IMG/VR virus record: IMGVR_UViG_3300008113_000003
Location: 124,001-188,000 of that record
DNA: 64,000 nucleotides
Direction: 5' to 3' (one strand)
The notes beneath the pieces were generated by a model. The model saw only the letters and a program-made list of their open reading frames with translations. It was not told where the DNA came from and did not search any database. Position numbers and translations under genes: made by a program. Below, piece by piece: positions 2,065 through 43,102 of the stretch (position 1 is the stretch's first letter; each line of letters opens with the position of its first letter).

Positions 2065-5004
2065 TTATATTATTATTTTACTATATTTAGTCTGAGTTTT
2101 AATTTTATTTTCTGGCATAAGCTGTTTATTAAACACCTCAGTTTTAGCCGATATTGCAAGTGCGTTTGAATTTTCATTATTAGCCGCAACTTTATTGTCA
2201 ATTTTAAAATCTATCGGATAGTCCGTTAAATTAATACCATAAGTATTATTGTGCAAACCATTGCTATTTTTTGTTGTTGGTGTGTAATTTGCCCTAATTT
2301 CAGTTGGTAAATTAAACATTGTTGGGTCATTTCCCTCAATTTGATCATGGGTATCTAAACCATTAAAAAACACAGCGTGTAGTCTATCTGGCTTGTTTGG
2401 GTTTTTTCTACTCTTATACTCTAAAGGATCATAATTATACAACGATTTAAATATCTCTAAATTAGTTGCACTATTGATATAACCTTCTATTTTTTCTTTA
2501 TTAGAATTAATGTCGGCTATTGTGTATTGTACATCCATTAATTTATTCATTTCAACAATGATGTTGTTAATGTTGTTAACCAAACCAATAGAATTATTCG
2601 CACTACCAGCCATTGTTCTGGCAAAAGCATCATAATGTGTTTCTGTTGTACCAGCAGTTGGGGTAATTTTATTTTTTATGTTATTAAAAAAAACACTAAC
2701 ACTTGTTTTATCCGCATTTCTAATTGAATCATCCAGCATTAAAAATTCATGGTTTGTGATCATGTCAACCAATTTTGTGTTTATTTTTTCGGTTGACCCG
2801 AACGAAAAACCACAATATAACATTAGTTTGTCAACAAACTCATAAATTGTTTCGATTGGTGTTTGTTGTGTATCGTAATGGTCAAGGTTGTTTATAACCA
2901 ATAAAGATGATATTAAACCGTTTATCTGATTACTTACTTTAATAGCCGTTTTGTTTCTTATGTTTTCGTTATATATTTGAGACTCGCTACTAGATGTGTC
3001 GATTTGCTTATCACCAATAGCAGTCATTCTCTCTAAAGCACGAAAAATTTCTTCGGTAAACTGAACCTCAAACCAATCTTTTGTCTTACTATTCCCTGGA
3101 TACGTTTTTTTAAAAACATATGTATTACTAGCAGTGTCCAATTCTTTTTGAAAATAATTCGGAAACGGGTAAAATTTTTGTATGTCTGGGTTATTAATGT
3201 CTATTTCATATTCACCAAAAAGTGATTGTATTTTCTGTCTACTGTTACTATCAGCAATTTGTCTAAATGAGTTTAAAGCTGATAAATTTAACAACGTTAA
3301 AAATACTTGCATATTATTCATTAATATTCGAATAACATTGTCGATATTTGGTACAAACCCTATCTTTTCTTGTAATTGAAAGAATAGTTCATCTTCGGTA
3401 ATTGACTCAACCTTTTCAAAGAAAAGAATTAAGTTGGTTGTTATGATTTTATGTACCTCTCTAAAAAATTTATCGCTGAAGTATACCTCTCTAAGGTCAT
3501 CAATGTTTGTTGATGAAACATCGTTAAACAGTATTAAATCATCATTAAAAATAGTTTTTATATTATTAGTATCTATTTTTTGTATATATGAAACCTCATT
3601 TTTAAAACCAGCTGCTGCTGTTAGTTTTAATTTAATTTCATTAATGATACTTTGTTTTAAACTAATATTAGCGCCAGCGGTTGTTGTATAGTCATCCCCA
3701 GAAAATAAATCAATTTTTGTGGAAACTGTATCAGCGTAATCCCTTATTAAACGATACGGGTCAATTTTATTTTGACCAGTTTCGTTGATCATTGTTTCAT
3801 TCTTTAAATTAACCAAACTACCAGTATTTAACCTAGTTATTAAATCATCGTTAAGATAATAATCATTTACTGACCTTTTATTTTGTCTTAATAACTTTTG
3901 CCAAAGTGGTAATTGTTGTTTTAAAGACTCATTAAACTTATCTTCTAATATTGAATACGTCTCTAAAGCAACAGATCTATCATTATTAATTTTTTTAAGC
4001 TCGTCATTATAAGCTAATTCGTTTTTACCCAGAACATTACTAGTTCTAATCATATCTAATATAGATGGGTATTTTGCAAAAAAATGTTTTCTAAACTCAT
4101 TTTTACTTTTTTCGTCTGGGCCGTCTATGACTAGCTTACCATCAACCTTTTTAGTGGTTACACCGTATAAAGCTTCATATTTTTTGTTTTGTTTTTCGTA
4201 TAAACCCTGTAATAATCTTTTACCTAGATAATCGTTGCTACCCGCATCACCTATTCTATACATGTATGGTGCTAAATATGCATACACCATCAAGAAGTTG
4301 TTATATATTGAAAAGGTTCTTGATAAGAATTCAGCTCTGATTATGTAATTACCTGTGGATGAGTCAAACGTTGTTGACGTTTTTGTCATGGATAGTGGGT
4401 ATTCAATACCCTTACCATAATAACCCTTTATTGTTAAACTAAATAACGGGTATGGAAACCTATAAAAAATGTTATATGGGTTTGTTGGGTCATTTCCTCT
4501 CTCAAGCAACGTCCTACCCTGTACATCAACAAATTCTATCTTTATGATAGGTGTCATTGATGCGTTATGTGATATATCGATATTTGTTATACCAAATGTT
4601 TCTGGGTCAAAAAAGTTTTCCTGATCACTGTTAGTGGTAAAAAAATCACTCCAGTCTGTTGTAAAAACACCTTTATTTCTTTTTTTATCAAAGTTTATGG
4701 TACCATCATTGTTTTTTGTGGCTTCTTTTAGTGGGTTCATAAAATTAACCCCTATTTGACCTATCGTTACAACGTTAAAACTAGCATCATCTTGTATAAT
4801 AGCACTATCTGGATTTAAACGGGCGGTAAGATTTGCATACATAACAAGATCTTCCTGTTTAACATACCTAGGTATTATATCATTTTCGCTATTAATAACT
4901 TTATTAGGGTCAACAACAAAAACGCCATTTTTTATGGCGCTATTTGCTTCAACCGACCTTCTACCAAAACTAGATAGTATCTTTTCATCATATTTATTAT
5001 CCAT
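2065..5004 (-). CDS. Large virion protein, possibly baseplate hub-like (979 aa)
   Basis: Long ORF overlapping the gp53-like gene, in the baseplate operon; N-terminal beta-rich segment FGITNIDI...FYRFPYPLFSLTIKGYYGK. The hub assignment rests on context only. Confidence 0.45.
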   Translation of the reverse strand: MDNKYDEKILSSFGRRSVEANSAIKNGVFVVDPNKVINSENDIIPRYVKQEDLVMYANLTARLNPDSAIIQDDASFNVVTIGQIGVNFMNPLKEATKNNDGTINFDKKRNKGVFTTDWSDFFTTNSDQENFFDPETFGITNIDISHNASMTPIIKIEFVDVQGRTLLERGNDPTNPYNIFYRFPYPLFSLTIKGYYGKGIEYPLSMTKTSTTFDSSTGNYIIRAEFLSRTFSIYNNFLMVYAYLAPYMYRIGDAGSNDYLGKRLLQGLYEKQNKKYEALYGVTTKKVDGKLVIDGPDEKSKNEFRKHFFAKYPSILDMIRTSNVLGKNELAYNDELKKINNDRSVALETYSILEDKFNESLKQQLPLWQKLLRQNKRSVNDYYLNDDLITRLNTGSLVNLKNETMINETGQNKIDPYRLIRDYADTVSTKIDLFSGDDYTTTAGANISLKQSIINEIKLKLTAAAGFKNEVSYIQKIDTNNIKTIFNDDLILFNDVSSTNIDDLREVYFSDKFFREVHKIITTNLILFFEKVESITEDELFFQLQEKIGFVPNIDNVIRILMNNMQVFLTLLNLSALNSFRQIADSNSRQKIQSLFGEYEIDINNPDIQKFYPFPNYFQKELDTASNTYVFKKTYPGNSKTKDWFEVQFTEEIFRALERMTAIGDKQIDTSSSESQIYNENIRNKTAIKVSNQINGLISSLLVINNLDHYDTQQTPIETIYEFVDKLMLYCGFSFGSTEKINTKLVDMITNHEFLMLDDSIRNADKTSVSVFFNNIKNKITPTAGTTETHYDAFARTMAGSANNSIGLVNNINNIIVEMNKLMDVQYTIADINSNKEKIEGYINSATNLEIFKSLYNYDPLEYKSRKNPNKPDRLHAVFFNGLDTHDQIEGNDPTMFNLPTEIRANYTPTTKNSNGLHNNTYGINLTDYPIDFKIDNKVAANNENSNALAISAKTEVFNKQLMPENKIKTQTKYSKIII

Positions 5005-5317
5005 AATACGCTACCCTGTTTTTTAATTTAGTCTCATACTCTCTTAATGTATCCTGTAATGGATATGGTACCCTAAGTGTGGTATTATCAGGTATTTCCC
5101 ATTCACTAGACGCTACATCTGGATTGGCCATTAAAATCAACCAACCGTAATATGGTACGGAATAATATTGCTGACTGATTTTATCCAACCTACTTTTACC
5201 TGTATTATATACGGTAAATAAATCGGTCGTTTTTTCAGTTAACTTAATAAACGGTGCGGATATGTGTTTTGAGTCACTATCCAATGTTTTGTATCTGTTA
5301 AAGTATCTAAGTGCCAT
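4997..5317 (-). CDS. Baseplate wedge protein, T4 gp53-like / LysM-like (106 aa)
   Basis: Motif RLDKISQQYY...GWLILMANP...IPDNTTLRVP, small size, and position after the tube-initiator-like giant gene. Confidence 0.6.
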   Translation of the reverse strand: MALRYFNRYKTLDSDSKHISAPFIKLTEKTTDLFTVYNTGKSRLDKISQQYYSVPYYGWLILMANPDVASSEWEIPDNTTLRVPYPLQDTLREYETKLKNRVAYYG

Positions 5318-5325
5318 ATTAATAA

Positions 5326-8300
5326 TTAATTAGAGAGCTCTGGGTAAAGTTCTGGGTAAAGTATTGATAATTGTGTTTGATCATTTTGTTTTATAGACTC
5401 AGCCTCATTTGTCGTACATAAGTTAATAATAGGATCATTCTTGTATTTTGTAAAGAGTTTTAGGTTTTTAACAATAACAGGATCTGGTTTACTTGTTTCT
5501 CTAAATGTTACTAAATAATCCTCTACACCACCTTTAAACAATTTAGCACGCATTTCTGATATACCCAATACTTTGTTTTGATTGTCAACACCAAAAACAT
5601 TTTTATTTATGTTTTTAATCGTATTGTCGTTTATATTTGACATATAACTCAGAACATCACCTAGATCAGCATCGTATTTTTTAACAAAACTCTCAATAAG
5701 TTTAAAGGTATCCTCAATTGATTTTTTTATCTTTTTCTTTTGAGCCTCTACATACGCTTCACTTCTTTTTGGGTCGTTTTTAATACTAGCTGGTGGGTTA
5801 ATACCAGTTTTTTCTATTTTAGCCATGATAGCCTCAATATGTGTTGGTTTATTTATGTATAAGTTATATAAAAACTCAATGAATAAAACCTCATGCATTG
5901 CTGACATTTTTACAGTTTCACCGTATGTTATACCAGTTGTTACACCAGTTGTTATACCACTTGTGGAACCACTAAAACCATTTAATTTAATTTTTTGTTG
6001 GTCTGGTAATGAATTAACATACTCTTCTGTTATGGTATAATCATAAGCCATTAAAGTGTTAAGATTTTTTAATTGCGTATTTAATGTTGTGCCAGTTATA
6101 TTAGGGTTGTTATCATTAAATAGGTAATAATTTATATCCTTTATAAAACTATTTTGTGAATTTGTTTTTTTGTTTACACCGTAATAGAACAAAATATTAG
6201 AAACTGTATCACCTGTTGTTGAACCAGTTGGGTTTAATGTTACACCAGTCAAATTATTAACTTGTAAATCAAATCCATAAGACGGTGTATAAGCTAAATC
6301 AATATCATTGTTTTTGCTCTCAAACTGGTCAGATAACATAACCTCTAAAGTCTTATTACTAAAATCTAAAACTTCATAGTTTATTTTTTCAAACGTATAT
6401 CTCATTTGATAAACACCATCGTTATACACGTTATTAGCTGTATTTGATATACTACCATCATTTGCTCTTGTAACTAAAGAGTATGAAGTTGTTTCTAGTG
6501 ATCTGGCACTATCTGTCGTACCATATTCATATGGGTTAAATGAAAAATTTTCACTTGTTATAGGACCAGTTACTGGTGGTGTTACCTGCCCAAACTTAAA
6601 GGTGTTTGTGGCAGTTGTTCCGTTAGAATCTAGTATATTATTTGTTGGTAAGAAGTTATCAAAATCGTATTGGTTTGGTAAATCATTAAGTGTTGTGTAA
6701 CCAAACACTTTTTTGATGTACTCCATGTTTCTATTGTACTCTTTTATTATATCATCAGATGCGCCATTATCTATGTTATTTTTCATTTGTTTAAAGAAAT
6801 ACAAACCATTACCTAATGAAGCATACTGATTTATCGTGAAACCAGTCGTTGGTGATAGAGAATTTGCGTCATTAATAATATTGTACACATCCGATAAACT
6901 AATTAAATTACCACCGTCTATTGATAATTTTTTGTACTCATCATAAGGGTTATAACCAAACATAGTACTACCAGTTACTGGCGTTTTTAATTTTTTACCA
7001 TTAGGTATTACTTCATATAATTTAGCCCTACCTTCTGAATACGTGGCATCATATCCGTACAATGGTAATGATAAACCAGCTAATACAACTGACATTTTGG
7101 CCACCGAATCATTTAAAGCGTTTATAGTTGTCTCATCATCCGCATCTTTTATAGACATGAATTTTGTATACTCAACATCAAAATAAGACGTAAAATCTTT
7201 AATGTGCTGTGTGTCTAAGTTTTTATAAAAAGATTTAAATGTTTTAAGAGTGTCATCAGGGCTAAACCAAAAAGCTAAAGTGTTTGTAGCGATTTTAGTT
7301 CTAAATTCGTCTTTAAATGAACTTATGATATCTCTATATATTTTTATACCGTTAGTGTCTCTAAAGAAAATACCACCTGTTTCAGATATACCATTAAAAT
7401 TATTAGTATACCCATTTGTAAAACTACCTTGGAAATATTTACTACTTCTACCATTGTTAGTGGCACCAGTTAATGCTGTAAAATTGTAAGGTAAACCTTT
7501 ACCGTCACCAATTTTAAACATGTATTCTTGTGGGTGTAAATTAAGTTTTAACGCCTCAAATTCCTCTGGTTTGTTATTATTCTTAGTTAAGAAAAACGGG
7601 TGTTGTCTAAACACGTCACCAAGTTCAAAATATCTTTTTTCTTCAGCAACGGTATTAAATATTTCTGAGTACGTTAACCCGCTAAGGCTTACGCTAGGGA
7701 TTGTAGTACCAGAGATATTATTAATTATTTCACCTATAGTTGTACCACTAACAGATAGAGGTTTTTTATAGTTTTTATTCTTTAATACATTATCAATAAC
7801 TTTATATTTGGCCGTTGGTGTGTTATTTAAACTTTCTTTTTTACCAACTAAACCACCAAAAGCTGTTATGTATTCACCAAAAGTTGTATACAATGAATCA
7901 AATAAATCATAATATTGTACATCATATCTTTGTATGTAATACCTACCATATTCTTGTCTAAATGCAAACTCACCAAAATTAGAGTGATCTATTGCTGTCC
8001 AAGTTGTTGTATCTGTTGGTAACGTTTTTGTATATACACCATTAACAATAGGGTACTGGCTAGCTTTTCTAACATAATATTGGCCTTGGTATATAACGCA
8101 AGTTTCCGCCTTGTATTCTTTGGTTGGGTCAAATGTTGTTGCTCCAGTTAAATAATGATAGTAAGTACCACCAGCTAATTTTGGTAGTAATCTTTCGCTA
8201 ACAACCCCAATTGTACCATAAGGTATTGGTAAATTTTCGGTTGAGGGTGTTATTAACTCAGCCGCTGCAACTATTGGTATTAAATCCAATGAATTTTCAG

Positions 8301-11300
8301 CAAAGAAATCTTGTTCTAGATTTATTAGATCTCTTTCTCTTCTATCTGTGTTAGCAAAAGTTCTTTCATCATACACATCAGTGTTGGCGTAATAGTTAAA
8401 TGTTAATGCATTTTGTAATTGATCAACATATCTTCTTAAACCTTGCCCACCAATATATTTAAACGACATGTTGACTTTCGCTAACATTGGTTGTACACCA
8501 ATACCTTCTGGGTTTAAATCCCATAATAAAGGATCATAACTAATATTTAAACTATTAACTATGATTTTTGTGTGGTAAAAATCACCAATTCTTAAAACAG
8601 AAACTGGTGGTCTACCAAATGCCGTATTTTTAGCGTCACAACCTGGAACACCAATATCCTTTGTGATTGTATCACCAGGTCTCATACATTGCTGTAAAAA
8701 GGTTAATCTTGCATTTAAACCCTCGGGTGTCATTGCATGAAAAGCTGGACTAAAATATTTTAATTTTTGTTTTAAACTATCAAAAATAATAGGTGATTCC
8801 TCTGATAAATAATCGAAATAATCACACTCAGTTAATAGTTTATTAAGTATTCTTTGCGCTATTTCTCTTTTTGTTACGTTTGTTGTTGGTACCTCTTCTT
8901 CACGATACAATGGTGGCGTTTCAGCTGGTGGTTCTTTTCTTTCTAAAGGTATTTCTTTTGGAATCAAAGTTGCGTTAATTTCAACCCTTCTAGCAAAAGA
9001 CGCTATAGGTGATAAATTACCACAAACAATATCAGCCTCTCTTCTGGAAACTTGTTGGAAAGGTGCCGTATTAACAGCTATACATGTACCAATAAGTTGA
9101 CTATTTATCGGTGAAGTAATTCCAGCTGGTACCGATGGTATAAAATTATTTTTTACTTTATCAAACTCATCATAAGTTTTAACCATATAATAAGTTTTGT
9201 TGTCACCATAACTTATTGGAAAATATTCTATACCAGCAGATGTTTTTAGTGGTCTACCGAATAAAGTTGTATACTCATTTGGTTCTGGGTTTGTCTGAAA
9301 TAAATCATCAAGTGTTTGACCTCTTGAGACAATATCAAAACTGATTTCTTGTTTAGAATTAATATCACCCCTTAAGATAACAATTTTTTTAGATTTTTCT
9401 AAGTCACCGTGTAGTTTATTAACATCCGCTTCAGTTAATATAGGTTCACCATTTATTGTATAACATTTAACGTCATCATCAGACATGACATCAAGTATTA
9501 ACCATTTTGTAACCGAAACAAATCTTCTTGATGCTAATTTATCATTATATCTTTGTAATTCCGCTAAGTTTTGACCAGGAGCTGATGGTGATGCGTGTGC
9601 AACCATACTAAATCTTAAGTTATAGTCTTTAGTGCTTGCATAATTTTTCGCTGAATAAGCTTTTGCAATGTTTAAATACTGTTCCTCATAACCATAAGAT
9701 TTTCCAGGATAAGTTTTTCTATCCGTAGTAAAAAAGTGTTGGTGTTCTTTTGCCGCATTTGTACCTATTGTGTAATCGTATCTAATCCAAGCCAATCTTT
9801 CTGATGGGTCTAAGTTAGAACCACCGCCAACAGCAACTTCTTTAAACTCAGAGTTTTGATCGAGTTTTTGTCCTCTAGCTAAATTTTGATAGATATCATA
9901 ATAATCAGAATATTTGTCAACGACAAAATTCGCTTGATTTTTATACGAATTTTTTTGTATAGGGATGTCATTCTCAAAAAATAAGTTAAATTGTGTTATC
10001 TTTTGGGTTTCTAATTTCGGGGTTTCTATCGTAATACCTTCTTGTTTAAAGCTACCTGATGATTCAACTTTGGTTCTTATTTTTTCATTTGGTAATCTAA
10101 TATCCAAATCAGATATAACCTTTTTAAAATACTCAATATCACTATCACTAAACACACCCCATATTCTAGCTAATTCAAAAATATCGTAATCTAAACAACC
10201 TGCCCAGAAAGCTGCTAATAATTCATCAACTTCACCATCTGTTAATTGAGCAAATTCTTTATCTACTAATAAGTTCATTATTGTTGGGTGATCGACAACT
10301 ATATCCCATGACAATGTGCCAGATCTTTCTGTGTTGTTGTAGGTATAAATTGGTTCTGGTCTACCTAAAAATTGGTGTGTTGTCCAGTTTGTTGTTGTAT
10401 CATCTGTGAATCTAATATTGTATGGCGGGAACCACATTATTCTACCACCATTAGCACCCTTTTCACAAGGTGGTAATTCATTAAATTGAGATGAATCTCT
10501 CCAAGCTAAATTCTCAATGGAGAACATATATTTTCTGGCCCTTTTCTCACCAAAAGCCTCAACAACAGCGTCTCCAAGACCATCACCTAACCTACCGTAA
10601 CCTTCGTTAACGTTAAGCGCTGATGGGTGTATATTTAAGTTTCCGTATCTATCCAATACAGAATTTCTTTCTTTTCTATTTAACTCTTTCCATCTAATAA
10701 GATCCGTTATCTTTGAAAATGGTTTTGCTTTTGTCCAGGCTCTACAAAGAGTAACCTCATTGTACATTCTTTCGTCATCTCTTTTACCAGCTGTATCTAA
10801 ACCAGGTACTAAATAAGTGTACCCGATAACCTCATCTTTTTTATTTTTTCTTGGTGTTTTAAACGGTGTAATAACCCCAGAGCTTTTTGGGGAAAAATGA
10901 TAACCATCGGTAAATTTAGTTTTAGTTTGGTCAATAGATCTTATTGCACGATTACTTGTACCAGATTTCAATAATTGTTGTGTAACCCCCATTATTGAGC
11001 AATCTCTAAATCTACCAGTTGAGGTTGGGTCATTTGGATCCCCGCCCATTGTTCTGGATAATATATCATCGTCAAGTTTACCTAAAGAATCCCATTTAAG
11101 TACACCATTTTTACCGTCTTCTATTGTCCAACGTTGTTCATCAGTGCTACCTCTCCAAATAAATGATGTTTGTATTGATCCGTATTTAGAAACATTTTCA
11201 ACACCTGGTTCTACATAATAATCAGGAACACCATCGTTTATTCTAATAGACCTTGTTAATTCACTATTACTCTTAACTTGTAAACCGTTATTATCTTGTA

Positions 11301-14091
11301 ATAAATTAAATATGCTAACATTTTTACCTGTTGTTATATAAGGTTTAAAAACAACGTCCTCAGTACCTTTTTGTGCTTTAGTTGTTCTTTCAAATATTCT
11401 TCTATCAGTAGCACCCATTTTACTTGTATAATCTGGGGAATATTTGTTATTACCTAAATTTGAAAATAGAAAAAATCTTTGTGATCTACCTGTTTCATCT
11501 AATCTATCAATAACCCTATTATCAAGTTTATTTTCAATATTTGAATCACCGAAACAAGATGGTCTTAAAACAATTGAGTCATCGGTAAAAAAAGCAGATG
11601 TTAAACCACCCAAACCACCAATGTCCGAAATAAAACTCGCTAATTTACCCAATCCACCTTTAAATGTTGTAATATCGGCATTACCCCTTTCAAGAATTGA
11701 TGATGGGTCTTTAATAAATTCAATAACTTTAAGTGGATTTGTTAACATGTCATCGATGGTTGTTAAACCAGCAACTTCTTGTGCACTTTTTGCTAATAAT
11801 CTTGTGTTTAAATGAAACTTTAATTCTAAAGCCGCTATTTGTGCTAATAAAGTGTCATTCTTTAAAGTTGGTTCTGTTAGTAAGTTTGCAATATCCAAAT
11901 CAGCGCCCAATAAAGCGCTTAACGGTGTTGATGCCGTTGGCACGTTTAAGAAATCACCCATTCTTATTTCTGTTGGATCGGCATTACTTAGCTTGTCTTC
12001 AGTAAGATATGGATTTTGTGGTGTGTTTGGGGCTTGATTTAGTAATAAATTTTGTAAAATTTCATATACAACAACGTTTTCCGCACCATATTTATTGGTT
12101 GTTATGTTAGTTGTGTAGTTTGGTGTTAAACCAGATAATTGAGCTTGGTTTGGTACAATAAAATCGTTTATAATTGTTTGTGAACCAACTGGTACAATAC
12201 CTGGATTAGCCAATGTAAACGCATCGGTTGGATCTGTTGGATCCTTAACCATGTTTTTGTTGAACAAGCTAATCATTATTGGTCCAGCTAACGTAACAAC
12301 ATCACCAGGGTTAACATTTGAAAATGTGCTTATTTGTGCTAAGGTACCTCTACCAGCCAAATATTGTGCAGCGATTGAAGCACTTGGTGATAAAGCTGTT
12401 AAACCAGCAGAAACATCCGCTGGCGTATTTAACGTCATTGATAAGTTCAATGTTCTTGGCGCAAGTGCGTCTGTTAATACATTACCAGGGTTAACAACAT
12501 TAAAGTTATTGATTGTTGTATCTAAACCTCTACCACCCAAATACTGTGTTGCTATTAAAGCTGATGGTGTTAAATCAAAAATACCAGTGGTGATATCAGC
12601 TGGCGTGCTTAAATTCATTGCAAGATCCAAAGTTCTTGGTGCAAGTGAATCAGTAACAACATTACCAGGGTTTACGTTTATAAAGTCATTGATAACACTG
12701 TCCAAACCTCTACCAGCCAAATACTGAGCGGCCAAAGCACCACTTAATGATGTAAGACCAGCTGTAATATCTGTAGGTGTATTGAGTGTATGTGAAAAGT
12801 TTAAGTTTCTTGGTATCACTGAATCAGTAACAACATTACCAGGATTTACGTTAGGTGATGTTGTAATTGCAACAAATGTACCTTTACCTGAAAGATATTG
12901 CGCAGCATAAGCACCACTTAAATTTGTCAACCCAGCCGTAATGTCGACTGGTGTATTTAATGTTTGTGCAAAGTTTTGTGTCCTTGGTGTAATAGCCTCA
13001 CTTAATACATCGCCAGGATTTACGTTAGGTGATGTTGTGATTGCAACAAATGTACCTTTACCTGAAAGATATTGTGCAGCTAAAGTAGAGTTGGGCGACA
13101 AATCATTTACACCTGCGGTAATATCCGTTGGTGTATTTAATGTTTGTGCAAAGTTTTGTGTTCTTGGTGTGATAGCATCTGATAAAACATCACCAGGGTT
13201 AACAACATTAAATGTGTTGATAACACTAAATGTTCCAAGTCCAGCCAAGTATTGAGCCGCATAAGCAGCGTTAGGTGTTAAATCATTTACGCCAGCGGTA
13301 ATGTCCGTTGGGGTACCAATATTCATAGCAAGATCTAAAGCTCTTGGTACGATGGCATCTGTTAATACATCCCCAGGGTTTATATTAGCAAATGTATTGA
13401 TTACAGTAAAAGCGCCTTTACCTGAAAGGTATTGGGCAGCGTAAGCCGCATTAGGTGTTAAATCATTTACACCAGCTGTAATATCCGTTGGTGTGTTCAA
13501 AGTCATGGCAAAATCCAAATTTCTTGGTGCCACGGCATCTGTTAACACATCACCTGGGTTTACGTTTACAAAATCATTTACAACGGTAAATGAACCTCTA
13601 CCTGAAAGGTATTGAGCGGCAAACGCAGCGTTAGGTGTTAAGTCATTTACACCAGCAGTAATATCTGTAGGTGTGTTTAATGTGTGTGATAAATCTAAAG
13701 TTCTTGGTGCAACAGCTTCTGTTAATACATCACCAGGGTTTAAGTTAGCAAAATCGTTTATAACTGTTAATTGACCCTTACTATTAACTAAAGCGGCAAC
13801 ATAAGCGCCACTCGCTGTCGTATCTAATAAACCAGCATTAATATCAACTGGTGTATTTAATGTTTTATTAAGATTAGCTATTCTTGCTGGTATGCCGTCT
13901 GTATCAACATTACCAGGGTTTTGTACATTATAAAAATGTATAGCAGCGTCTTGTCCTAACGAACTTAAATAAGCGTTAACTGTTACCGAATTAGTTAGAT
14001 TAACTAAACCAGTTACAACATCAGGTGGTGCTTGTAAATTTAAATTAAGGATCACGTTTCTAAACTGTCCCGATATACTATTTAAGCTCAT
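5326..14091 (-). CDS. Giant multidomain baseplate/tail protein (2921 aa): N-terminal 60-aa tandem repeats, tube-initiator (gp48/gp54-like) motifs and an OmpA-like segment
   Basis: Uninterrupted ORF; motifs FLGRPEPIYTYNNTERSGTLSWDIVVD, PPVSVLRIGDFY...QPMLAKVNMSFKYIG, AHASPSA...YNDKLASRRFVSV...RRVEI. Confidence 0.7.
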   Translation of the reverse strand: MSLNSISGQFRNVILNLNLQAPPDVVTGLVNLTNSVTVNAYLSSLGQDAAIHFYNVQNPGNVDTDGIPARIANLNKTLNTPVDINAGLLDTTASGAYVAALVNSKGQLTVINDFANLNPGDVLTEAVAPRTLDLSHTLNTPTDITAGVNDLTPNAAFAAQYLSGRGSFTVVNDFVNVNPGDVLTDAVAPRNLDFAMTLNTPTDITAGVNDLTPNAAYAAQYLSGKGAFTVINTFANINPGDVLTDAIVPRALDLAMNIGTPTDITAGVNDLTPNAAYAAQYLAGLGTFSVINTFNVVNPGDVLSDAITPRTQNFAQTLNTPTDITAGVNDLSPNSTLAAQYLSGKGTFVAITTSPNVNPGDVLSEAITPRTQNFAQTLNTPVDITAGLTNLSGAYAAQYLSGKGTFVAITTSPNVNPGNVVTDSVIPRNLNFSHTLNTPTDITAGLTSLSGALAAQYLAGRGLDSVINDFINVNPGNVVTDSLAPRTLDLAMNLSTPADITTGIFDLTPSALIATQYLGGRGLDTTINNFNVVNPGNVLTDALAPRTLNLSMTLNTPADVSAGLTALSPSASIAAQYLAGRGTLAQISTFSNVNPGDVVTLAGPIMISLFNKNMVKDPTDPTDAFTLANPGIVPVGSQTIINDFIVPNQAQLSGLTPNYTTNITTNKYGAENVVVYEILQNLLLNQAPNTPQNPYLTEDKLSNADPTEIRMGDFLNVPTASTPLSALLGADLDIANLLTEPTLKNDTLLAQIAALELKFHLNTRLLAKSAQEVAGLTTIDDMLTNPLKVIEFIKDPSSILERGNADITTFKGGLGKLASFISDIGGLGGLTSAFFTDDSIVLRPSCFGDSNIENKLDNRVIDRLDETGRSQRFFLFSNLGNNKYSPDYTSKMGATDRRIFERTTKAQKGTEDVVFKPYITTGKNVSIFNLLQDNNGLQVKSNSELTRSIRINDGVPDYYVEPGVENVSKYGSIQTSFIWRGSTDEQRWTIEDGKNGVLKWDSLGKLDDDILSRTMGGDPNDPTSTGRFRDCSIMGVTQQLLKSGTSNRAIRSIDQTKTKFTDGYHFSPKSSGVITPFKTPRKNKKDEVIGYTYLVPGLDTAGKRDDERMYNEVTLCRAWTKAKPFSKITDLIRWKELNRKERNSVLDRYGNLNIHPSALNVNEGYGRLGDGLGDAVVEAFGEKRARKYMFSIENLAWRDSSQFNELPPCEKGANGGRIMWFPPYNIRFTDDTTTNWTTHQFLGRPEPIYTYNNTERSGTLSWDIVVDHPTIMNLLVDKEFAQLTDGEVDELLAAFWAGCLDYDIFELARIWGVFSDSDIEYFKKVISDLDIRLPNEKIRTKVESSGSFKQEGITIETPKLETQKITQFNLFFENDIPIQKNSYKNQANFVVDKYSDYYDIYQNLARGQKLDQNSEFKEVAVGGGSNLDPSERLAWIRYDYTIGTNAAKEHQHFFTTDRKTYPGKSYGYEEQYLNIAKAYSAKNYASTKDYNLRFSMVAHASPSAPGQNLAELQRYNDKLASRRFVSVTKWLILDVMSDDDVKCYTINGEPILTEADVNKLHGDLEKSKKIVILRGDINSKQEISFDIVSRGQTLDDLFQTNPEPNEYTTLFGRPLKTSAGIEYFPISYGDNKTYYMVKTYDEFDKVKNNFIPSVPAGITSPINSQLIGTCIAVNTAPFQQVSRREADIVCGNLSPIASFARRVEINATLIPKEIPLERKEPPAETPPLYREEEVPTTNVTKREIAQRILNKLLTECDYFDYLSEESPIIFDSLKQKLKYFSPAFHAMTPEGLNARLTFLQQCMRPGDTITKDIGVPGCDAKNTAFGRPPVSVLRIGDFYHTKIIVNSLNISYDPLLWDLNPEGIGVQPMLAKVNMSFKYIGGQGLRRYVDQLQNALTFNYYANTDVYDERTFANTDRRERDLINLEQDFFAENSLDLIPIVAAAELITPSTENLPIPYGTIGVVSERLLPKLAGGTYYHYLTGATTFDPTKEYKAETCVIYQGQYYVRKASQYPIVNGVYTKTLPTDTTTWTAIDHSNFGEFAFRQEYGRYYIQRYDVQYYDLFDSLYTTFGEYITAFGGLVGKKESLNNTPTAKYKVIDNVLKNKNYKKPLSVSGTTIGEIINNISGTTIPSVSLSGLTYSEIFNTVAEEKRYFELGDVFRQHPFFLTKNNNKPEEFEALKLNLHPQEYMFKIGDGKGLPYNFTALTGATNNGRSSKYFQGSFTNGYTNNFNGISETGGIFFRDTNGIKIYRDIISSFKDEFRTKIATNTLAFWFSPDDTLKTFKSFYKNLDTQHIKDFTSYFDVEYTKFMSIKDADDETTINALNDSVAKMSVVLAGLSLPLYGYDATYSEGRAKLYEVIPNGKKLKTPVTGSTMFGYNPYDEYKKLSIDGGNLISLSDVYNIINDANSLSPTTGFTINQYASLGNGLYFFKQMKNNIDNGASDDIIKEYNRNMEYIKKVFGYTTLNDLPNQYDFDNFLPTNNILDSNGTTATNTFKFGQVTPPVTGPITSENFSFNPYEYGTTDSARSLETTSYSLVTRANDGSISNTANNVYNDGVYQMRYTFEKINYEVLDFSNKTLEVMLSDQFESKNNDIDLAYTPSYGFDLQVNNLTGVTLNPTGSTTGDTVSNILFYYGVNKKTNSQNSFIKDINYYLFNDNNPNITGTTLNTQLKNLNTLMAYDYTITEEYVNSLPDQQKIKLNGFSGSTSGITTGVTTGITYGETVKMSAMHEVLFIEFLYNLYINKPTHIEAIMAKIEKTGINPPASIKNDPKRSEAYVEAQKKKIKKSIEDTFKLIESFVKKYDADLGDVLSYMSNINDNTIKNINKNVFGVDNQNKVLGISEMRAKLFKGGVEDYLVTFRETSKPDPVIVKNLKLFTKYKNDPIINLCTTNEAESIKQNDQTQLSILYPELYPELSN
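12313..13920 (-). repeat. Nine tandem coding repeats of 174-180 bp (58-60 aa), consensus NPG(D/N)V(L/V)TDA..PR.L....TLNTP.DITAG...L......AAQYL.G.G....IN.F.NV
   Basis: Aligned directly from the translation; each unit starts with NPG; partial units flank both ends. Confidence 0.95.
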
Positions 14092-14129: not shown

Positions 14130-16889
14130 TTATATCGGTGAAATACCAAAATCAACAATATAATTTGCGGTACCACCATCATTTTGTGACATAGTTCTTT
14201 TTATCCATTCACCCATCATAACAGGATCTGAATCATAAAACTCTTTAGCGTTTATTTTTTGTACCCCGCTTTTAGTTTTTGCTTCAATCTCTCCATTCAC
14301 AACAACTGTAATTGTTTGTTCACTAGAGTTAGTAGCGTTTGAATACTTATTGGCGTTTAATTCTGAAATTAACGCCATTGCTGATCCAGCATTTCCAGAT
14401 AATATTTTACCGTTTGATAAAGCCAAAGCATCTTGCACTTGTGACATTTCAGCACCCATTGATTCAGGTACAGCATCGAGACCAGCTAATTCTAAGAATT
14501 TTCTATCCGTATAACCACCACCTTTTAAAGCTTCAGTTGTTAAAGCTTGTTTATATTCATTACCACCAGTAAAAGCGTCAGCAAAATCAGCACCGCTTCT
14601 TCTAAATCTTGCACCAGACGTTTGATAAAAATCTTGTGCAACACTTTCCATACCCATGGCTGAAGTAACTAATCCACCAGCGCCATCAAGAACACCCATA
14701 ATACCATTACCTAGTCCACCAAAAAAATCACCAAAAAAAGAAGAATCTTCATCTTCCTTTCTAAAGTTTTTTACGATTTCTGTTAAAGCACCTTTATTAT
14801 CAATACCAATATTTTCTGTTATTTTTCTTGTTTTTTCATCACCCATTTCCATTTTAATACCAGCTTTCCATAAAGATTCACCAACGTATGGCACCTCTTT
14901 CATAGATTTAAGTATTTCACCAAAAATAACTTTTACGTATGGCATAACACCATCTAAAACAAAACGTATAACTTTATCGAATATGGTACCTATTTTATCA
15001 AAAAAGCTTTTGTTTTTATCACCCATAATAGCTCTTATGTCTGTAATAAAACCCTTAAAACCAGCTAAAAACATATCCATACCAGTTCTAAATTTACCAC
15101 CTGGGCTAAATAAGTCCCTCATAAGCGGTATTAATGTTGCGGCTATTTCTTTACCTAAGGTTTCAATTTCATTTAATAACCCACTATCAGCTAAAAGCTT
15201 ATTTAATTCCGTAAATAAAGGTGTTAAACCAATTGCGAATCTTTCTAATATATTATTAAATCTGTCCTGTAAGGTTAATCTTTGTTTTGCAGCTTCGTCA
15301 TTAGCGGTTCTTTGTGCTAATATTTGTTTTAATTGATCTTGGCTTGTTATGTTACTAACTAATTGGCTAACACCGTTAGCCATTTTAATTTCATATTGAC
15401 CTTTATCGTTGACTGTCATTAAATTAGCCAATGCCTGTTGGTCGTCATCGCTAAAACCGATTAAAGAACCTGTAGTTTTTGTTAAGTTATTTAATTTGTC
15501 AGCTGTTTTAGCTTGCTCTATACCAGCATTAACAATATCATCATAATTTTGTCCAAGTGCTTCAGCGGTCTCTCTTAATATTTGACGTTGCGCTGGTGGT
15601 ATTATAAAATCACCATTTTTGTTTTTAATAGCTAAACTTTTTGCTGAAGTTATTAATTTTTCGGCCATACCGTCCGCATTGTTCATCGAATCGTACATTA
15701 ATTGGAACGGGTCACCAAACATTTGTGCAAACTCACCACCAAGAACTTGTATCTTAGCCGCAGCTTCTACGGCCTTTTCTGGGCTAAAAAAAGCATCTTT
15801 AAATGATTTAATTGATTCGGCTAAGTTAAATCTTAATGATTCGGCTTTAGCGGCTAGTTTTGTTAAACCCTCAACGCTTCTACCAAAACCAGACCCTGTT
15901 AAAGCTTTAACAACATCTGTTGTTGTTTGTAATAATTTTGTTTGATTAATATTAAATCTAGCAGCTTCATTTCTACCTTTTTGGGCAACTTTAAGTGTTG
16001 TACCTAATGAATATCCAACATTATCAAATTCAGCAACCATTTTGGTTATACCCTCAACAGCTAATCCAGTACTATTACCAAGATTAACAATATCAGTAAT
16101 TTCTTTAGTACTAAAAATTCTGTTTTTACCAGTTGCTTCACTAAAGCCTTTTATGATCTTGCCAACGTCTTCTATTTTACCACCATACTCGAGTATTTCG
16201 TTGTATATTGTCGGCATTGCATCTAATAACTGGTAATACTCTTTACTCGTCATACCAATATCAGCGGATAAGGCACCTACGACTTTTTGCATTTCCAAAA
16301 ACAATTTCCAAGCTCTTTCTATTGGGAAGATGATTTTAAAAATTGCTTTACCAATATCCCAAGCAACACCCAAAATACTACCAAACAAACTAAATAAACC
16401 ACCAAATATGTTAGTTAATGTACCACCAACTTTACCAAATAAATCAAATGCTTTACCCAAACCACTTACGGAACCTTTAGCTGTTTGATAATTTACTTCT
16501 TGTATTTCTTTTTCAAGTTCCTTTTGTTCTTTTTTCTTTTTAACTAATTTAGCCGCTTCTTTATTACCCCTTTTTTCAAGTTCGTTAGCAACTTTACCCA
16601 GATTAACAATTTCATCTTCGGTTTTTTTAAGATTTTTCTTAGCTTTTTTAAGGTTATCAGCATCTTCAGCCATTTCCTTGGCAAATCTTTTTAAATTACC
16701 CCATATTGATTGTGTTTTTAAATCCCACTCTCTACCAGCAGCCTTTTTAGCATTTATGGCATCATACATAGACAACATCTTATTGATGTGGTCCTCTTCT
16801 TGTTGTTGGCTTATAATACCCTTTTTTCTGGCATCTGTTAACTTGTTTAAAGCCCCGTCCAAATTGTTAAAAAAATCCGCTTGCGCCAT
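14130..16889 (-). CDS. Tape-measure-like protein, paralog 1 (919 aa)
   Basis: Ala/Gly/Lys-rich helical composition with amphipathic FGGLFSLFG-type stretches; lies downstream of tube and chaperone genes. Confidence 0.7.
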   Translation of the reverse strand: MAQADFFNNLDGALNKLTDARKKGIISQQQEEDHINKMLSMYDAINAKKAAGREWDLKTQSIWGNLKRFAKEMAEDADNLKKAKKNLKKTEDEIVNLGKVANELEKRGNKEAAKLVKKKKEQKELEKEIQEVNYQTAKGSVSGLGKAFDLFGKVGGTLTNIFGGLFSLFGSILGVAWDIGKAIFKIIFPIERAWKLFLEMQKVVGALSADIGMTSKEYYQLLDAMPTIYNEILEYGGKIEDVGKIIKGFSEATGKNRIFSTKEITDIVNLGNSTGLAVEGITKMVAEFDNVGYSLGTTLKVAQKGRNEAARFNINQTKLLQTTTDVVKALTGSGFGRSVEGLTKLAAKAESLRFNLAESIKSFKDAFFSPEKAVEAAAKIQVLGGEFAQMFGDPFQLMYDSMNNADGMAEKLITSAKSLAIKNKNGDFIIPPAQRQILRETAEALGQNYDDIVNAGIEQAKTADKLNNLTKTTGSLIGFSDDDQQALANLMTVNDKGQYEIKMANGVSQLVSNITSQDQLKQILAQRTANDEAAKQRLTLQDRFNNILERFAIGLTPLFTELNKLLADSGLLNEIETLGKEIAATLIPLMRDLFSPGGKFRTGMDMFLAGFKGFITDIRAIMGDKNKSFFDKIGTIFDKVIRFVLDGVMPYVKVIFGEILKSMKEVPYVGESLWKAGIKMEMGDEKTRKITENIGIDNKGALTEIVKNFRKEDEDSSFFGDFFGGLGNGIMGVLDGAGGLVTSAMGMESVAQDFYQTSGARFRRSGADFADAFTGGNEYKQALTTEALKGGGYTDRKFLELAGLDAVPESMGAEMSQVQDALALSNGKILSGNAGSAMALISELNANKYSNATNSSEQTITVVVNGEIEAKTKSGVQKINAKEFYDSDPVMMGEWIKRTMSQNDGGTANYIVDFGISPI

Positions 16890-20338: not shown

Positions 20339-20587
20339 TTATCTTCTTCCAGCTTTCGCTTTATTCATCTCTCTTTCTCTTGCTTCTTTTATTTTTTCGT
20401 TTTCTTCCATCAAGATATCAATAAATTTCCTTCTCTCAAAAACTGGCATAACCATTACGTCTGAATAAGTAAAATTAGCATGCTTAACCAATATGTACGA
20501 TTCGTACATCATTTGGTTTCTATACTCATACGTAAGGCCAAAGAAATTTGGCTGTAATAGGAAGTTCACCAAAAAAAAACTCTCCAC
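20339..20587 (-). CDS. Small tail-chaperone-associated ORF; either a 57-aa gene from ATG 20512 or the C-terminal extension of a frameshift product
   Basis: Overlaps the 3' end of the chaperone gene in the +1 frame; motif FTYSDVMVMPVFERRKFI. Confidence 0.6.
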   Translation of the reverse strand: MESFFLVNFLLQPNFFGLTYEYRNQMMYESYILVKHANFTYSDVMVMPVFERRKFIDILMEENEKIKEAREREMNKAKAGRR

Positions 20588-21284
20588 TTGGAGCTTCTAC
20601 ATTAATGGTCAAATCAAGACCTGGTTCGTTATCTGATAAGTGCTTCCTAAATTCAGCAGAATCCATTGGTGACATAGTGTCAATGAACTGGGCAATTGCA
20701 GCCTTTTCTCTAATACCATCAACTTCAGTGATTTGACTTTGTAATCTAAGTGTCATCAATTGGCTAATAGCGTTTGAACCCATCTTTTTGGTTCTTGCCT
20801 GATCCTCTTTAACCAATTTATCATCCTCATCAGATGTCAAATATCTAAACTTAACTGTTTTCTTACACTTTGGTAGTGTAAATGAACATTCACCGTTTTC
20901 ATCTGGTTGTAAACTATTTTCTTTTGTTGGTAATTGACTAATATCAATATCCTCGATAAATTTTTCCCCTGTTTTAGGGTCTGTTAATTCCACTGGGTAA
21001 ATTTCACCATAACCTGTGGCTCTCAAAAAGAAGATAATAGCGTTTCTATCACCTGGTAATAATTGTCCAGCTTTGATATCTTTATCTAAAATCTTTTTTT
21101 CCAATAAAATATCTAACACCTTACCACTTTGCAATAAGTTTGGTGATGTCAAAATGTTTTCATCAGCAGCGGTCATATACGCAACCTTAATGGTGTCTTT
21201 TTTATTTTTGTAAAATTTACCACCTGAAGGTAAACCAATTACGTCATGTGCTGGTTCAAAGTAAACTTGTTGTCCGTTATCCAT
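20526..21284 (-). CDS. Tail/baseplate assembly chaperone (T4 gp26-like) (252 aa)
   Basis: LPSGGKFY...VAYMTAADENIL...GDRNAIIFFLRATGYG...LPITAKFLWP; located between the tube and tape-measure genes. Confidence 0.65.
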   Translation of the reverse strand: MDNGQQVYFEPAHDVIGLPSGGKFYKNKKDTIKVAYMTAADENILTSPNLLQSGKVLDILLEKKILDKDIKAGQLLPGDRNAIIFFLRATGYGEIYPVELTDPKTGEKFIEDIDISQLPTKENSLQPDENGECSFTLPKCKKTVKFRYLTSDEDDKLVKEDQARTKKMGSNAISQLMTLRLQSQITEVDGIREKAAIAQFIDTMSPMDSAEFRKHLSDNEPGLDLTINVEAPSGEFFFGELPITAKFLWPYV

Positions 21285-27117: not shown

Positions 27118-27142
27118 ATAAATACTTTGATTTATTAATGAA

Positions 27143-27173
27143 TTGACTTTGTCAGAAAAATTTATTATTATTA
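27143..27173 (+). promoter_or_regulatory. Putative host-type (early/middle) promoter of the helicase
   Basis: TTGACT at 27143-27148, 17-nt spacer, TATTAT at 27166-27171. Confidence 0.45.
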
Positions 27174-27205
27174 GATAATAATAAATTAAAGGAAAAGGAA
27201 CGTAA

Positions 27206-30156: not shown

Positions 30157-30199
30157 AATATTCCCGTATTTAAAAGTATTTATTATAAATATTAGGAAC

Positions 30200-40752: not shown

Positions 40753-40753
40753 C

Positions 40754-43069: not shown

Positions 43070-43102
43070 GTTTAGCAACTATTTAATTTAAAAAAATATT
43101 GT

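What the first reader, a model, noticed from the sequence alone, without database searches (positions are those of the whole stretch)
8440..10540. OmpA-like segment inserted between the two halves of a tube-initiator fold in the 2921-aa protein
Seen: the first half of a tail-tube-initiator-type motif (W..HQFLGRPEPIYTYNNTERSGTLSWDIVVD, about 10300-10400) lies several hundred residues from its usual second half (PPVSVLRIGDFY..IIVNSL.ISYD...WD...QPM.A.V.MSF.YIG, about 8440-8620). Between them are FFEND (about 9970), AHASPSA...YNDKLASRR..SV (about 9510-9605) and RRVEI (about 8975). Known: these match the OmpA/MotB-like peptidoglycan-binding signature (G.T/AS...YN..LS.RRA..V...NRRVE). Inference: a baseplate tube-capping protein carries a cell-wall anchor that could hold the penetrating tube on the periplasmic peptidoglycan.
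Basis: partly seen in the sequence, partly recalled or inferred. Interest (0 to 1): 0.6.

Follow-up and report, generated by a model that had tools for sequence, protein, structure and literature searches.

The report
OmpA-like domain nested in tube-initiator fold
A giant baseplate protein of an uncultured jumbo phage has a tail-tube-type domain split in two by an inserted OmpA-like cell-wall-binding-type domain, a new variant of the known habit of tube initiators to carry a peptidoglycan-binding-type module.

Summary
The architecture he inferred holds.

- **Tube fold.** Residues ~1185-1267 and ~1826-1885 together give a tail-tube fold. Its best structural matches are baseplate tube initiators (Afp7, Pvc7, phiCD508, diffocin; Z 9.0-9.3 on a close relative).
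- **Nested domain.** The segment between them holds an OmpA/Pal/MotB-like domain. A family profile matches only OmpA-like PDB chains (E 1.2e-7), with structural Z of 6-7.
- **True insertion.** 29 relatives join the two halves with a short acidic linker instead.

Three details are wrong or weaker than stated.
- No sequence link to T4 gp48 or gp54 was found.
- HMMER places the canonical first OmpA motif at 1452-1457, not at FFEND.
- The canonical DAP-binding Asp is an invariant Ser (119 of 119). The Asn, Leu and Arg contacts are near-invariant.

Peptidoglycan binding is untested. The closest precedent is the LysM module carried by the tube initiators of Mu, Milano and R2 pyocin, which is read as structural. 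The family is large (about 2000 clusters in each of two searches), has no Pfam or PHROG model, and is absent from 50,697 deposited phage genomes. I rate it a new variant of a known kind, of moderate interest.

The parts
5326..14091 (-). Giant ORF, 2921 aa (P0001). It sits in the tail/baseplate module, between the hub-side genes and a small wedge-type gene.
   Evidence: Neighbours: sheath 22645-25710 (phrog_23, 2.9e-55), gp19-like tube 21854-22342 (PF06841, 3.8e-6), T4_baseplate PF12322 at 20526-21284, and phrog_7145 wedge subunit at 4997-5317. The insert-less relative L003 has the same gene order.
10291..10539 (-). N-terminal half of the tube-like beta domain, aa ~1185-1267 (short strands plus a long beta-hairpin).
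   Evidence: AF2 strands at aa 1191-1194, 1216-1219, 1224-1239 and 1248-1265. VIA alignments to tube initiators run from model residue 40 to 732. The homologous part of P0212 has pLDDT 81-89.
10042..10290 (-). First part of the helix-rich excursion, aa ~1268-1350 (4-5 helices). It leaves the tube domain where canonical tube proteins have one outer helix.
   Evidence: Helices. The segment is conserved in relatives with and without the insert.
8956..10002 (-). Inserted OmpA/Pal/MotB-like domain with two internal expansions, aa ~1364-1712.
   Evidence: pLDDT about 90. VIA: 3td3_A Z 6.9 (117 of 120 aligned), 4g4v_A 6.4, plus OprF, TagL, Pal, PorE and MotB. Profile against PDB found OmpA-like chains only, E 7.7e-5 and 1.2e-7. 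PF00691 hits in relatives P0091 and P0115 align here.
9487..9738 (-). Canonical OmpA core by sequence, aa 1452-1535: first motif HFFTTD, strand ending in AHAS (Ser1501 in place of the GHTD Asp), then the helix YNDKLASRR.
   Evidence: HMMER alignments. Conservation: S1501 119/119, N1516 118/119, L1519 116/119, R1523 119/119. TagL DAP contacts are Asp486, Asn494, Leu497 and Arg501 (PMC8253398).
9022..9474 (-). Beta-rich sub-insertion inside the OmpA-like domain, aa ~1540-1690. Fold not identified. Its length varies widely among relatives.
   Evidence: Strands. The spacing from RR to RRVE is 64-196 aa in relatives, against about 45 in canonical domains.
8962..8994 (-). Last OmpA-like strand, (A)RRVEI, aa 1700-1710.
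   Evidence: R1701 is 119/119. Strand at aa 1702-1711.
8617..8868 (-). Second part of the helix-rich excursion, aa ~1742-1825. It is highly conserved, and a Pro/Glu-rich linker (aa 1713-1741) precedes it.
   Evidence: mean column identity 67%.
8437..8616 (-). C-terminal half of the tube-like beta domain, aa ~1826-1885 (three strands).
   Evidence: Strands at aa 1831-1834, 1841-1852 and 1870-1880. The homologous strands of P0212 have pLDDT up to 93. VIA ranges end at about model residue 732, or 390-400 in P0212.

Best explanation
Shown: residues ~1185-1885 of the giant baseplate protein form one tail-tube-fold domain of the baseplate tube-initiator type. Its strands come from two stretches about 560 residues apart. 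A helix-rich excursion leaves the domain where ordinary tube proteins have their single helix. In that excursion, at the place where sister lineages have only a short acidic linker, sits a complete OmpA/Pal/MotB-like domain with two variable internal expansions. Inferred: by analogy with solved tube proteins, that helix faces the outside of the ring, so the excursion and the OmpA-like domain project outward. The protein forms a ring at the centre of the baseplate on which the gp19-like tube starts. The OmpA-like domain is an accessory, lineage-specific module that contacts the host cell wall (peptidoglycan or a related envelope polymer) once the tail tip has crossed the outer membrane. It would steady the tip on the sacculus during penetration and DNA delivery. 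Its pocket keeps the Asn, Leu and Arg that contact DAP in canonical domains but has an invariant Ser for the Asp, so specificity may differ. My confidence is about 0.85-0.9 in the architecture and about 0.4-0.45 in cell-wall binding during infection. The figure given here is for the whole statement.
For: Architecture:
- The AF2 model of P0001:1150-1920 gives only two classes of VIA matches. Tube-fold chains span model residues 40-732. OmpA-like chains span about 210-562.
- For the model of the insert-less relative P0212:520-948, all 50 best rows are tube-fold. Baseplate initiators are on top (6j0n_b, 6rao_G and 9gb2_S at Z 9.3; 8v3w_G at 9.0). True tube proteins and Hcp score 6.8 or less.
- 29 relatives lack the insert, and their halves are joined by 20-100 aa of acidic linker.
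- Presence of the insert needs only 2 changes on the flank tree, against 26.6 for shuffled labels.
- The gene sits in a T4-like tail module with conserved order.

OmpA-like identity.

Ligand-binding function:
- N1516, L1519 and R1523 are the counterparts of the TagL DAP contacts Asn494, Leu497 and Arg501 (PMC8253398). They are kept in 116-119 of 119 sequences.
- The short-insert OmpA domains average only 29% column identity.
- The domain can be swapped for a disordered linker. That fits an accessory host-interaction role better than an indispensable assembly role.
Against: - The canonical DAP-binding Asp (GHTD; TagL Asp486) is Ser in 119 of 119 sequences.
- The domain carries two large expansions of unknown fold.
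- In solved systems the peptidoglycan-binding-type module of tube initiators (LysM in Mu gp43, Milano, R2 pyocin) is read as a structural baseplate element, not as a wall anchor.
- A ring of 2921-aa subunits is hard to picture passing the outer membrane with the tube.
- The flanks of the window's own model have only pLDDT 50-70.
- Structural Z scores are 6-9, which is middling by the tool's own warning.
- Foldseek found nothing at E <= 0.001.
- There is no evidence that the protein is in the virion.
Confidence: 0.45

Rival explanations
1. Structural glue. The OmpA-like domain does no wall binding. It is a protein-protein adaptor inside the baseplate, filling the role that LysM modules or BH1a proteins play between hub, tube initiator and wedges in other contractile tails.
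For: Mu gp43, Milano and R2 pyocin tube initiators carry a LysM module inside a helix-rich domain that contacts the wedges. In A-1(L) and T4 the LysM is on a separate protein (gp16, gp53). Here too the module sits within a helix-rich excursion of about 8 helices. No LysM (PF01476) is detectable in the 206-kb record. The DAP-binding Asp is lost.
Against: Sister lineages with the same gene order replace the domain by a disordered acidic linker. That is odd for a load-bearing assembly element. The pocket residues Asn, Leu and Arg are invariant although the rest of the domain is very divergent. The internal expansions vary strongly in length, as expected for a surface-exposed, host-facing part.
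Confidence: 0.3
2. Retargeted pocket. The domain binds a ligand other than DAP-type peptidoglycan, for example another envelope polymer or a different stem peptide, or a phage partner protein. The invariant Ser (and perhaps the conserved FFEND loop) would redefine specificity.
For: Ser1501 is invariant at the Asp position. FFENDxP upstream of the canonical core is more conserved than the core's own first motif (F 117, N 115, D 104, P 118 of 119). HMMER and AF2 disagree on which strand is beta1. Relatives occur in assemblies labelled as very different bacteria, including an actinobacterial MAG, though binning is unreliable.
Against: Three of the four canonical DAP contacts are kept. No ligand data exist. 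OmpA-like domains are not known to me to bind non-peptidoglycan ligands through this pocket (own knowledge).
Confidence: 0.2
3. Chance resemblance. The motifs are coincidental and there is neither an OmpA-like nor a tube-like fold.
For: The window's own protein has no Pfam or PHROG hit. Foldseek E-values are all above 0.001.
Against: The profile against the PDB returns only OmpA-like chains (35 at E < 0.01, best 1.2e-7). All top VIA rows belong to just two fold families, each covering the expected segment. The key residues are invariant. Some relatives reach the PF00691 cut-off.
Confidence: 0.02

Closest known systems
Tube initiators of eCIS and simple myophages (Afp7 6rao_G, Pvc7 6j0n_b/9qgl_7A, phiCD508 9gb2_S, diffocin 8v3w, A-1(L) gp18 8kea)
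   Same: They share the tube-like beta-barrel domain and are the best structural matches (Z 8.3-9.3 for the listed Afp7, Pvc7, phiCD508 and diffocin chains, 123-148 residues aligned; A-1(L) gp18 scores Z 6.8-7.2). The gene sits between the tube/hub genes and the wedge genes.
   Different: Those proteins have about 140-280 residues and a contiguous barrel, with any extra alpha/beta domain appended at the C-terminus. Here the barrel is split by about 560 residues and embedded in a 2921-aa protein. No sequence similarity is detectable.
Mu gp43, Milano gp25 and R2 pyocin tube initiators with a LysM module
   Same: A tube-like domain plus a helix-rich domain that contains a peptidoglycan-binding-type module (PMC11915804).
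   Different: The module here is OmpA-like, not LysM. The helix-rich part and the module are nested inside the tube domain rather than following it. In Mu the LysM is read as a structural element.
T4 gp48 (PF11091) and gp54
   Same: Tube-fold proteins at the base of the tube. The tail module is T4-like (gp19-like tube, T4_baseplate, gp32 in a relative). There is an ESM-feature lead to a PF11091-bearing cluster, score 0.91.
   Different: No match by HMMER, PHROGs or Pfam. No match by hhalign to T4 gp48 or gp54 alone, or to a 117-sequence gp48 alignment. The T4 proteins have no OmpA-like insert.
OmpA/Pal/MotB-family peptidoglycan-binding domains, including the T6SS anchor TagL and the T9SS protein PorE
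   Same: Same fold and signature (YN..L..RR...V, RRVE). The Asn, Leu and Arg DAP contacts are conserved. In TagL and PorE the domain immobilises a large machine on the wall (PMC8253398).
   Different: Ser replaces the DAP-binding Asp. There are two large internal expansions (PorE also has one in the beta3-alpha3 loop). The domain sits in a virion tail protein and would attack the wall from outside, rather than in a resident envelope protein.

Membership tests
OmpA-like / OmpA_C peptidoglycan-binding domain (PF00691) | Significant sequence-profile match to the family | tested here: met
   The window protein alone has no PF00691 hit. Homologous segments of relatives do: P0091 at 27.2 bits (equal to the cut-off), P0115 at 26.2. 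Family profiles match only OmpA-like PDB chains, at 7.7e-5 and 1.2e-7 with 35 chains below 0.01.
OmpA-like / OmpA_C peptidoglycan-binding domain (PF00691) | Beta-alpha-beta-alpha-beta-beta sandwich fold | tested here: met
   The AF2 centre has pLDDT about 90. VIA: 3td3_A Z 6.9 with 117 of 120 aligned, 4g4v_A Z 6.4 with 102 of 111, 9uu2_A Z 6.3 with 108 of 109, plus OprF, TagL, Pal, MotB and PorE. The Z values are moderate, and which strand is beta1 is ambiguous.
OmpA-like / OmpA_C peptidoglycan-binding domain (PF00691) | DAP-contacting residues (TagL Asp486, Asn494, Leu497, Arg501; PMC8253398) | tested here: inconclusive
   Asn1516 118/119, Leu1519 116/119 and Arg1523 119/119 are kept. The Asp position is Ser1501 in 119/119.
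OmpA-like / OmpA_C peptidoglycan-binding domain (PF00691) | Non-covalent binding to peptidoglycan | not testable with these tools
   This needs a sacculus or muropeptide binding assay.
Tail-tube fold, baseplate tube-initiator class | Tube-like beta-barrel domain matching solved initiators over most of their tube domain | tested here: met
   Relative P0212: Z 9.3 (6j0n_b, 139 aligned; 6rao_G, 142; 9gb2_S, 123) and Z 9.0 (8v3w_G, 131 of 136). Initiators rank above tube proteins and Hcp. Window protein: Z 7.5 to 8kea_P over model residues 40-732.
Tail-tube fold, baseplate tube-initiator class | Gene position in the tail module, next to the tube/hub and wedge genes | tested here: met
Tail-tube fold, baseplate tube-initiator class | Hexameric ring that docks the first tube ring; present in the virion | not testable with these tools
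No isolate or proteome is available.
T4 gp48 (PF11091 T4_tail_cap) / T4 gp54 | Sequence or profile similarity to the family | tested here: not met
   No PF11091 in the genome at E <= 1. No Pfam or PHROG hit on the flanks at E <= 10. No T4 baseplate chain in the PDB profile search at E <= 10. hhalign probability below 1% against gp54, gp48 and a 117-sequence gp48 alignment. The only support is a feature-based lead.
LysM-bearing tube initiators (Mu gp43 type) | LysM module in the initiator | tested here: not met
   No PF01476 in P0001 or in the 206-kb record at E <= 1. Divergent baseplate LysM folds could escape this model.

The most novel reading that the evidence does not exclude
An abundant, uncultured lineage of large aquatic myoviruses has replaced a disordered loop on the outside of its tube-initiator ring with a remodelled OmpA-like domain (Ser in place of the DAP-binding Asp, plus a conserved FFEND element). 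This domain clamps the tail tip to the host sacculus, or to a non-canonical wall ligand, from outside. That would be a wall anchor on a phage injection tube that works like the TagL or PorE anchors of secretion systems, and it has not been described for phage tails.
Probability: 0.35. Interest if true: 0.65.

Novelty: new variant of a known kind. Interest (0 to 1): 0.5.

Why it matters
Tube initiators and their neighbours often carry a LysM module, which has a peptidoglycan-binding fold. Whether such modules ever touch the wall is unsettled. This family offers a second, unrelated peptidoglycan-binding fold at the equivalent place. The domain is present in some lineages and replaced by a linker in others. 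Its binding pocket is strictly conserved but altered. That natural presence/absence contrast makes the question testable with binding assays on the isolated domain and with comparison of virions. The work also gives a first structural annotation (tube-initiator-like module, helix-rich excursion, OmpA-like insert) to a protein family with thousands of metagenomic members, no Pfam or PHROG model, and no representative among deposited phage genomes.

Tried and rejected
- Pfam and PHROGs on the whole protein and on the separate flanks and centre: no usable hit.
- phmmer of the region against the PDB: nothing.
- tblastn against 50,697 phage genomes with the 771-aa region (E <= 1e-3) and with the most conserved 174 aa (E <= 1): no match.
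- Foldseek against the PDB for both models: no row at E <= 0.001, only weak initiator rows with probability 0.6-0.9.
- hhalign of the family profile against T4 gp54, T4 gp48, a 117-sequence gp48 alignment and the window's own gp19-like tube protein: no similarity.
- Complex prediction of the N-half against the C-half: verdict 'no answer'. It counts neither for nor against.
- ESM Atlas search with the C-terminal 1001 aa: no usable hit (one search was a size slip).
- BLASTP of T4 baseplate proteins against the window's tail genes: only gp19 matches the tube.
- I rejected the idea that the tube-like domain is a gp27/VgrG-type hub domain or a Dit. Those chains score lower (Z 5.4-6.9) than initiators. 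A difference of about 2 Z units is not decisive.
Full report
**What is there**

The window is low in G+C (about 31%). It lies at positions 124001-188000 of a 206-kb IMG/VR virus record that is estimated 69% complete, so this is a jumbo-size phage. The finding lies inside one ORF, window 5326-14091 on the minus strand, 2921 aa (P0001).

- the first 'tube' motif at aa 1239-1267
- FFEND at 1371-1375
- AHASPSA at 1498-1504
- YNDKLASRR at 1515-1523
- RRVEI at 1701-1705
- PPVSVLRIGDFY at 1828-1839
- MSFKYIG at 1875-1881

**Context**

On the same strand the genes run in this order:
- a 1021-aa sheath (phrog_23, 2.9e-55)
- a 162-aa gp19-like tube protein (PF06841, 3.8e-6; BLASTP to T4 gp19, 1.8e-6)
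- a T4_baseplate/PF12322 hub-type protein
- a 252-aa ORF
- two paralogous ORFs of 857 and 919 aa
- the giant ORF
- a 106-aa protein matching a 'baseplate wedge subunit' PHROG
- ORFs of 979 aa and more than 687 aa

Terminase, portal, DNA polymerase and helicase lie further on. This is therefore the tail/baseplate module of a distant T4-like myovirus.

**Relatives**

The giant protein has no Pfam or PHROG hit. The region has no match among 50,697 deposited phage genomes, even for its most conserved 174 residues at E <= 1. In metagenomes the region has a very large family: 1996 and 2026 clusters at E <= 0.001 in two length windows. Protein lengths run from 476 to about 2900 aa. The contigs reach 360 kb and many are marine (TARA). 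JGI's pipeline named a few relatives 'OmpA-like peptidoglycan-associated protein'. Two relatives reach or nearly reach the PF00691 cut-off: P0091 at 27.2 bits and P0115 at 26.2 bits. Those hits align exactly with aa 1490-1530 of the window protein.

**The middle is OmpA-like**

A profile of 34 aligned regions (A1) searched against all PDB sequences returned OmpA/Pal/MotB-family chains as every row at E < 0.07 (best 7.7e-5); a few weak unrelated rows appeared above that. A profile of only the domain, from 44 relatives with short insertions (A3), gave 35 such chains below E 0.01 and no other family. The best was 1.2e-7.

An AlphaFold2 model of P0001:1150-1920 predicts aa ~1364-1714 with pLDDT about 90. 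An exhaustive structural comparison matched this part to:
- A. baumannii OmpA, 3td3_A (Z 6.9, rmsd 3.2, 117 of 120 residues)
- A. baumannii Pal, 4g4v_A (Z 6.4)
- OprF, TagL, Y. pestis Pal, PorE, MotB and others

Two stretches are much longer than in canonical domains and vary among relatives. FFEND to the AxAS strand is 70-157 aa. RR to RRVE is 64-196 aa. In the window protein the second stretch is a beta-rich subdomain (aa ~1540-1690) whose fold I could not search separately.

**The binding pocket**

In TagL the residues that contact DAP are Asp486, Asn494, Leu497 and Arg501 (PMC8253398). Going by the HMMER alignments, their counterparts here are Ser1501, Asn1516, Leu1519 and Arg1523. Among 119 insert-bearing relatives they are S 119, N 118, L 116 and R 119. 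In many relatives the spacing from Ser to Asn is the canonical 8 residues. These short-insert domains average only 29% column identity. The pocket is therefore under strong constraint, yet the acidic residue that canonical domains use is replaced throughout the family.

One point stays unresolved. HMMER aligns the canonical first motif and helix to aa 1452-1484, a motif conserved as [FY]-F-x-x-[VI]-[IV]. The AF2 model instead uses the upstream FFEND strand (aa 1365-1371) as a sheet strand, and the structural alignments start there. FFENDxP is the more conserved of the two. It may be an extra strand, or it may supply an acid to the pocket.

**The flanks form one tube-type domain**

In the window protein's own model the flanks have only pLDDT 50-70. 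Even so, every non-OmpA row of the structural search was a tail-tube-fold protein aligned from model residue about 40 to about 732, that is, across both flanks. Cyanophage A-1(L) baseplate initiators were on top (8kea_P, Z 7.5, 144 residues).

The second protein search gave the decisive help. 29 of the listed relatives have the N-flank joined to the C-flank by only 20-100 residues of acidic low-complexity linker, with no room for an OmpA-like domain. I folded one of them, P0212:520-948, which is 49% identical to the window protein across the aligned region; insert-less relatives are 51-62% identical in each flank. The alignment had 148 sequences, and the beta core reached pLDDT 81-93.

All 50 best rows of the exhaustive structural search were tube-fold proteins aligned over residues about 39-400. 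In the second look, baseplate tube initiators came first:
- Pvc7, 6j0n_b: Z 9.3, 139 aligned
- Afp7, 6rao_G: Z 9.3, 142 aligned
- phiCD508, 9gb2_S: Z 9.3
- diffocin, 8v3w: Z 9.0-9.1, 131 of 136-138 aligned
- Streptomyces and Anabaena CIS chains: Z 8.1-8.3

True tube proteins, Hcp and Dit scored 6.9 or less. The Z values are moderate and Foldseek E-values never passed 0.001. What carries the argument is the uniformity of the lists and their coverage of whole target domains.

**Where the insert sits**

The order of elements is:
1. three to four strands
2. four to five helices
3. the linker, or the OmpA-like domain
4. about four helices
5. three strands

Canonical tube proteins have a single helix at that point, on the outer face of the ring (established knowledge of the Hcp/gp19 fold). 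The helix-rich excursion and the nested OmpA-like domain should therefore project outward from the ring. This is an inference.

**Insertion as an evolutionary state**

On a tree built from flank columns only (148 sequences), insert presence needs 2 changes, against 26.6 for shuffled labels. Gain cannot be told from loss. An insert-less relative on an 81-kb contig shows the same gene order: sheath, an 80%-identical tube protein, T4_baseplate, a 709-aa gene, the module protein (1028 aa), a 365-aa gene, a 105-aa wedge-type gene, a 2130-aa gene, then gp32.

**What is not supported**

I found no sequence-level link to T4 gp48 or gp54.
- No T4 baseplate chain appeared in the profile search against the PDB at E <= 10.
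- PF11091 is absent from the genome.
- The flanks have no Pfam or PHROG hit.
- hhalign probabilities were below 1% against gp54, gp48 and a 117-sequence gp48 alignment.

A protein-language-model search gave one lead: the nearest named cluster of P0241 carries PF11091, with score 0.91. That is a lead only. The right label is therefore 'tube-initiator-like by fold and position', not 'gp48/gp54 family member'.

**Mechanism**

The closest functional precedent is the LysM module. Mu gp43, Milano gp25 and the R2 pyocin initiator combine a tube-like domain with a helix-rich domain that contains LysM, and this domain contacts the wedges. In A-1(L) and T4 the LysM sits on a separate protein (PMC11915804 and PMC10966104). 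Those modules are interpreted as structural. The window genome has no detectable LysM.

Two readings compete for the OmpA-like domain.

I favour the wall-contact reading at about 0.4-0.45, for three reasons. The domain is dispensable in sister lineages with the same baseplate gene order. Its internal expansions vary like a host-facing part. Its pocket residues are invariant.

The structural-glue reading gets about 0.3. The precedent supports it, and so does the loss of the Asp. It also avoids the difficulty of moving a ring of 2921-aa subunits through the outer membrane with the tube.

A retargeted pocket that binds another ligand is a third possibility, at about 0.2.

**Novelty**

A peptidoglycan-binding-type module on a tube initiator is a known theme. 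OmpA-like anchors on secretion machines (TagL, PorE) are also known. Three things are new here:
- the fold used (OmpA-like instead of LysM)
- its nested position inside the tube domain
- the altered pocket

All of this occurs in a very large, unannotated family with no cultured member. My literature searches for OmpA-like domains in phage baseplates or tube initiators found only the T6SS papers. I rate it a new variant of a known kind.

**Limits**

- The complex test of the two halves gave no answer.
- The host is unknown. Relatives occur in assemblies labelled Flavobacteriaceae, Gammaproteobacteria, Polynucleobacter, Aquiluna and a Prochlorococcus single-cell genome, and binning makes these labels weak evidence.

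Noticed in passing
window 12300-13900 (aa ~60-600 of P0001); TRF array 12949-13754: The N-terminus of the giant protein is an array of about 60-aa repeats. At the DNA level the period is 180 nt, with 4.5 copies at 74% matches, and more degenerate copies lie on either side. No family hit. Relatives have much shorter N-termini.
   Followed up: partly
window 14130-16889 (-) and 16943-19516 (-): Two adjacent large ORFs (919 and 857 aa) are paralogues. Both match the single 709-aa gene that precedes the module protein in relative L003 (25% identity; E 1e-31 and 5e-11). They have no Pfam or PHROG hit and could be hub or tape-measure-side components.
   Followed up: partly
L003:13105-14202: The insert-less relative has an extra 365-aa gene between the module protein and the 105-aa wedge-type gene. 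It has no BLAST counterpart in the window. Its size fits a gp27-like hub. In the window that function may lie in the giant protein's C-terminal 1000 aa or elsewhere.
   Followed up: no
window 8956-10002 (aa 1365-1377 versus 1452-1457): Sequence and model disagree on beta1 of the OmpA-like domain. HMMER aligns the canonical first motif to aa 1452-1457. AF2 and VIA use the more conserved FFENDxP strand about 80 residues upstream.
   Followed up: partly
L005-L012 (genome contigs): Relatives of the conserved C-half occur in MAG or SAG assemblies labelled Polynucleobacter, Aquiluna, Flavobacteriaceae (248-kb contig), Bacteroidetes, Gammaproteobacteria, Alphaproteobacteria and Prochlorococcus sp. 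AG-409-L21. The spacing between halves suggests inserts of about 335-340 aa in L007 and L009, and only about 150 aa in the Prochlorococcus SAG contig.
   Followed up: partly
window ~27000-31000: Gene orientation flips from minus to plus, and the GC skew changes sign near 29-30 kb (the cumulative skew minimum). This marks a divergent boundary between the tail module and the replication and glycosyltransferase genes.
   Followed up: no
window 39532-50332: A run of plus-strand genes includes glycosyltransferase-type PHROG hits (phrog_7162, 8e-41; phrog_1721, 1e-4). This may be a sugar-modification cluster in the phage.
   Followed up: no
window 4997-5317 (-): The 106-aa gene after the giant ORF matches phrog_7145 'baseplate wedge subunit' (2e-4). 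It has a faint BLASTP hint to T4 gp53, the LysM-bearing wedge protein (E 0.05), and none to gp25, so its identity is open.
   Followed up: partly
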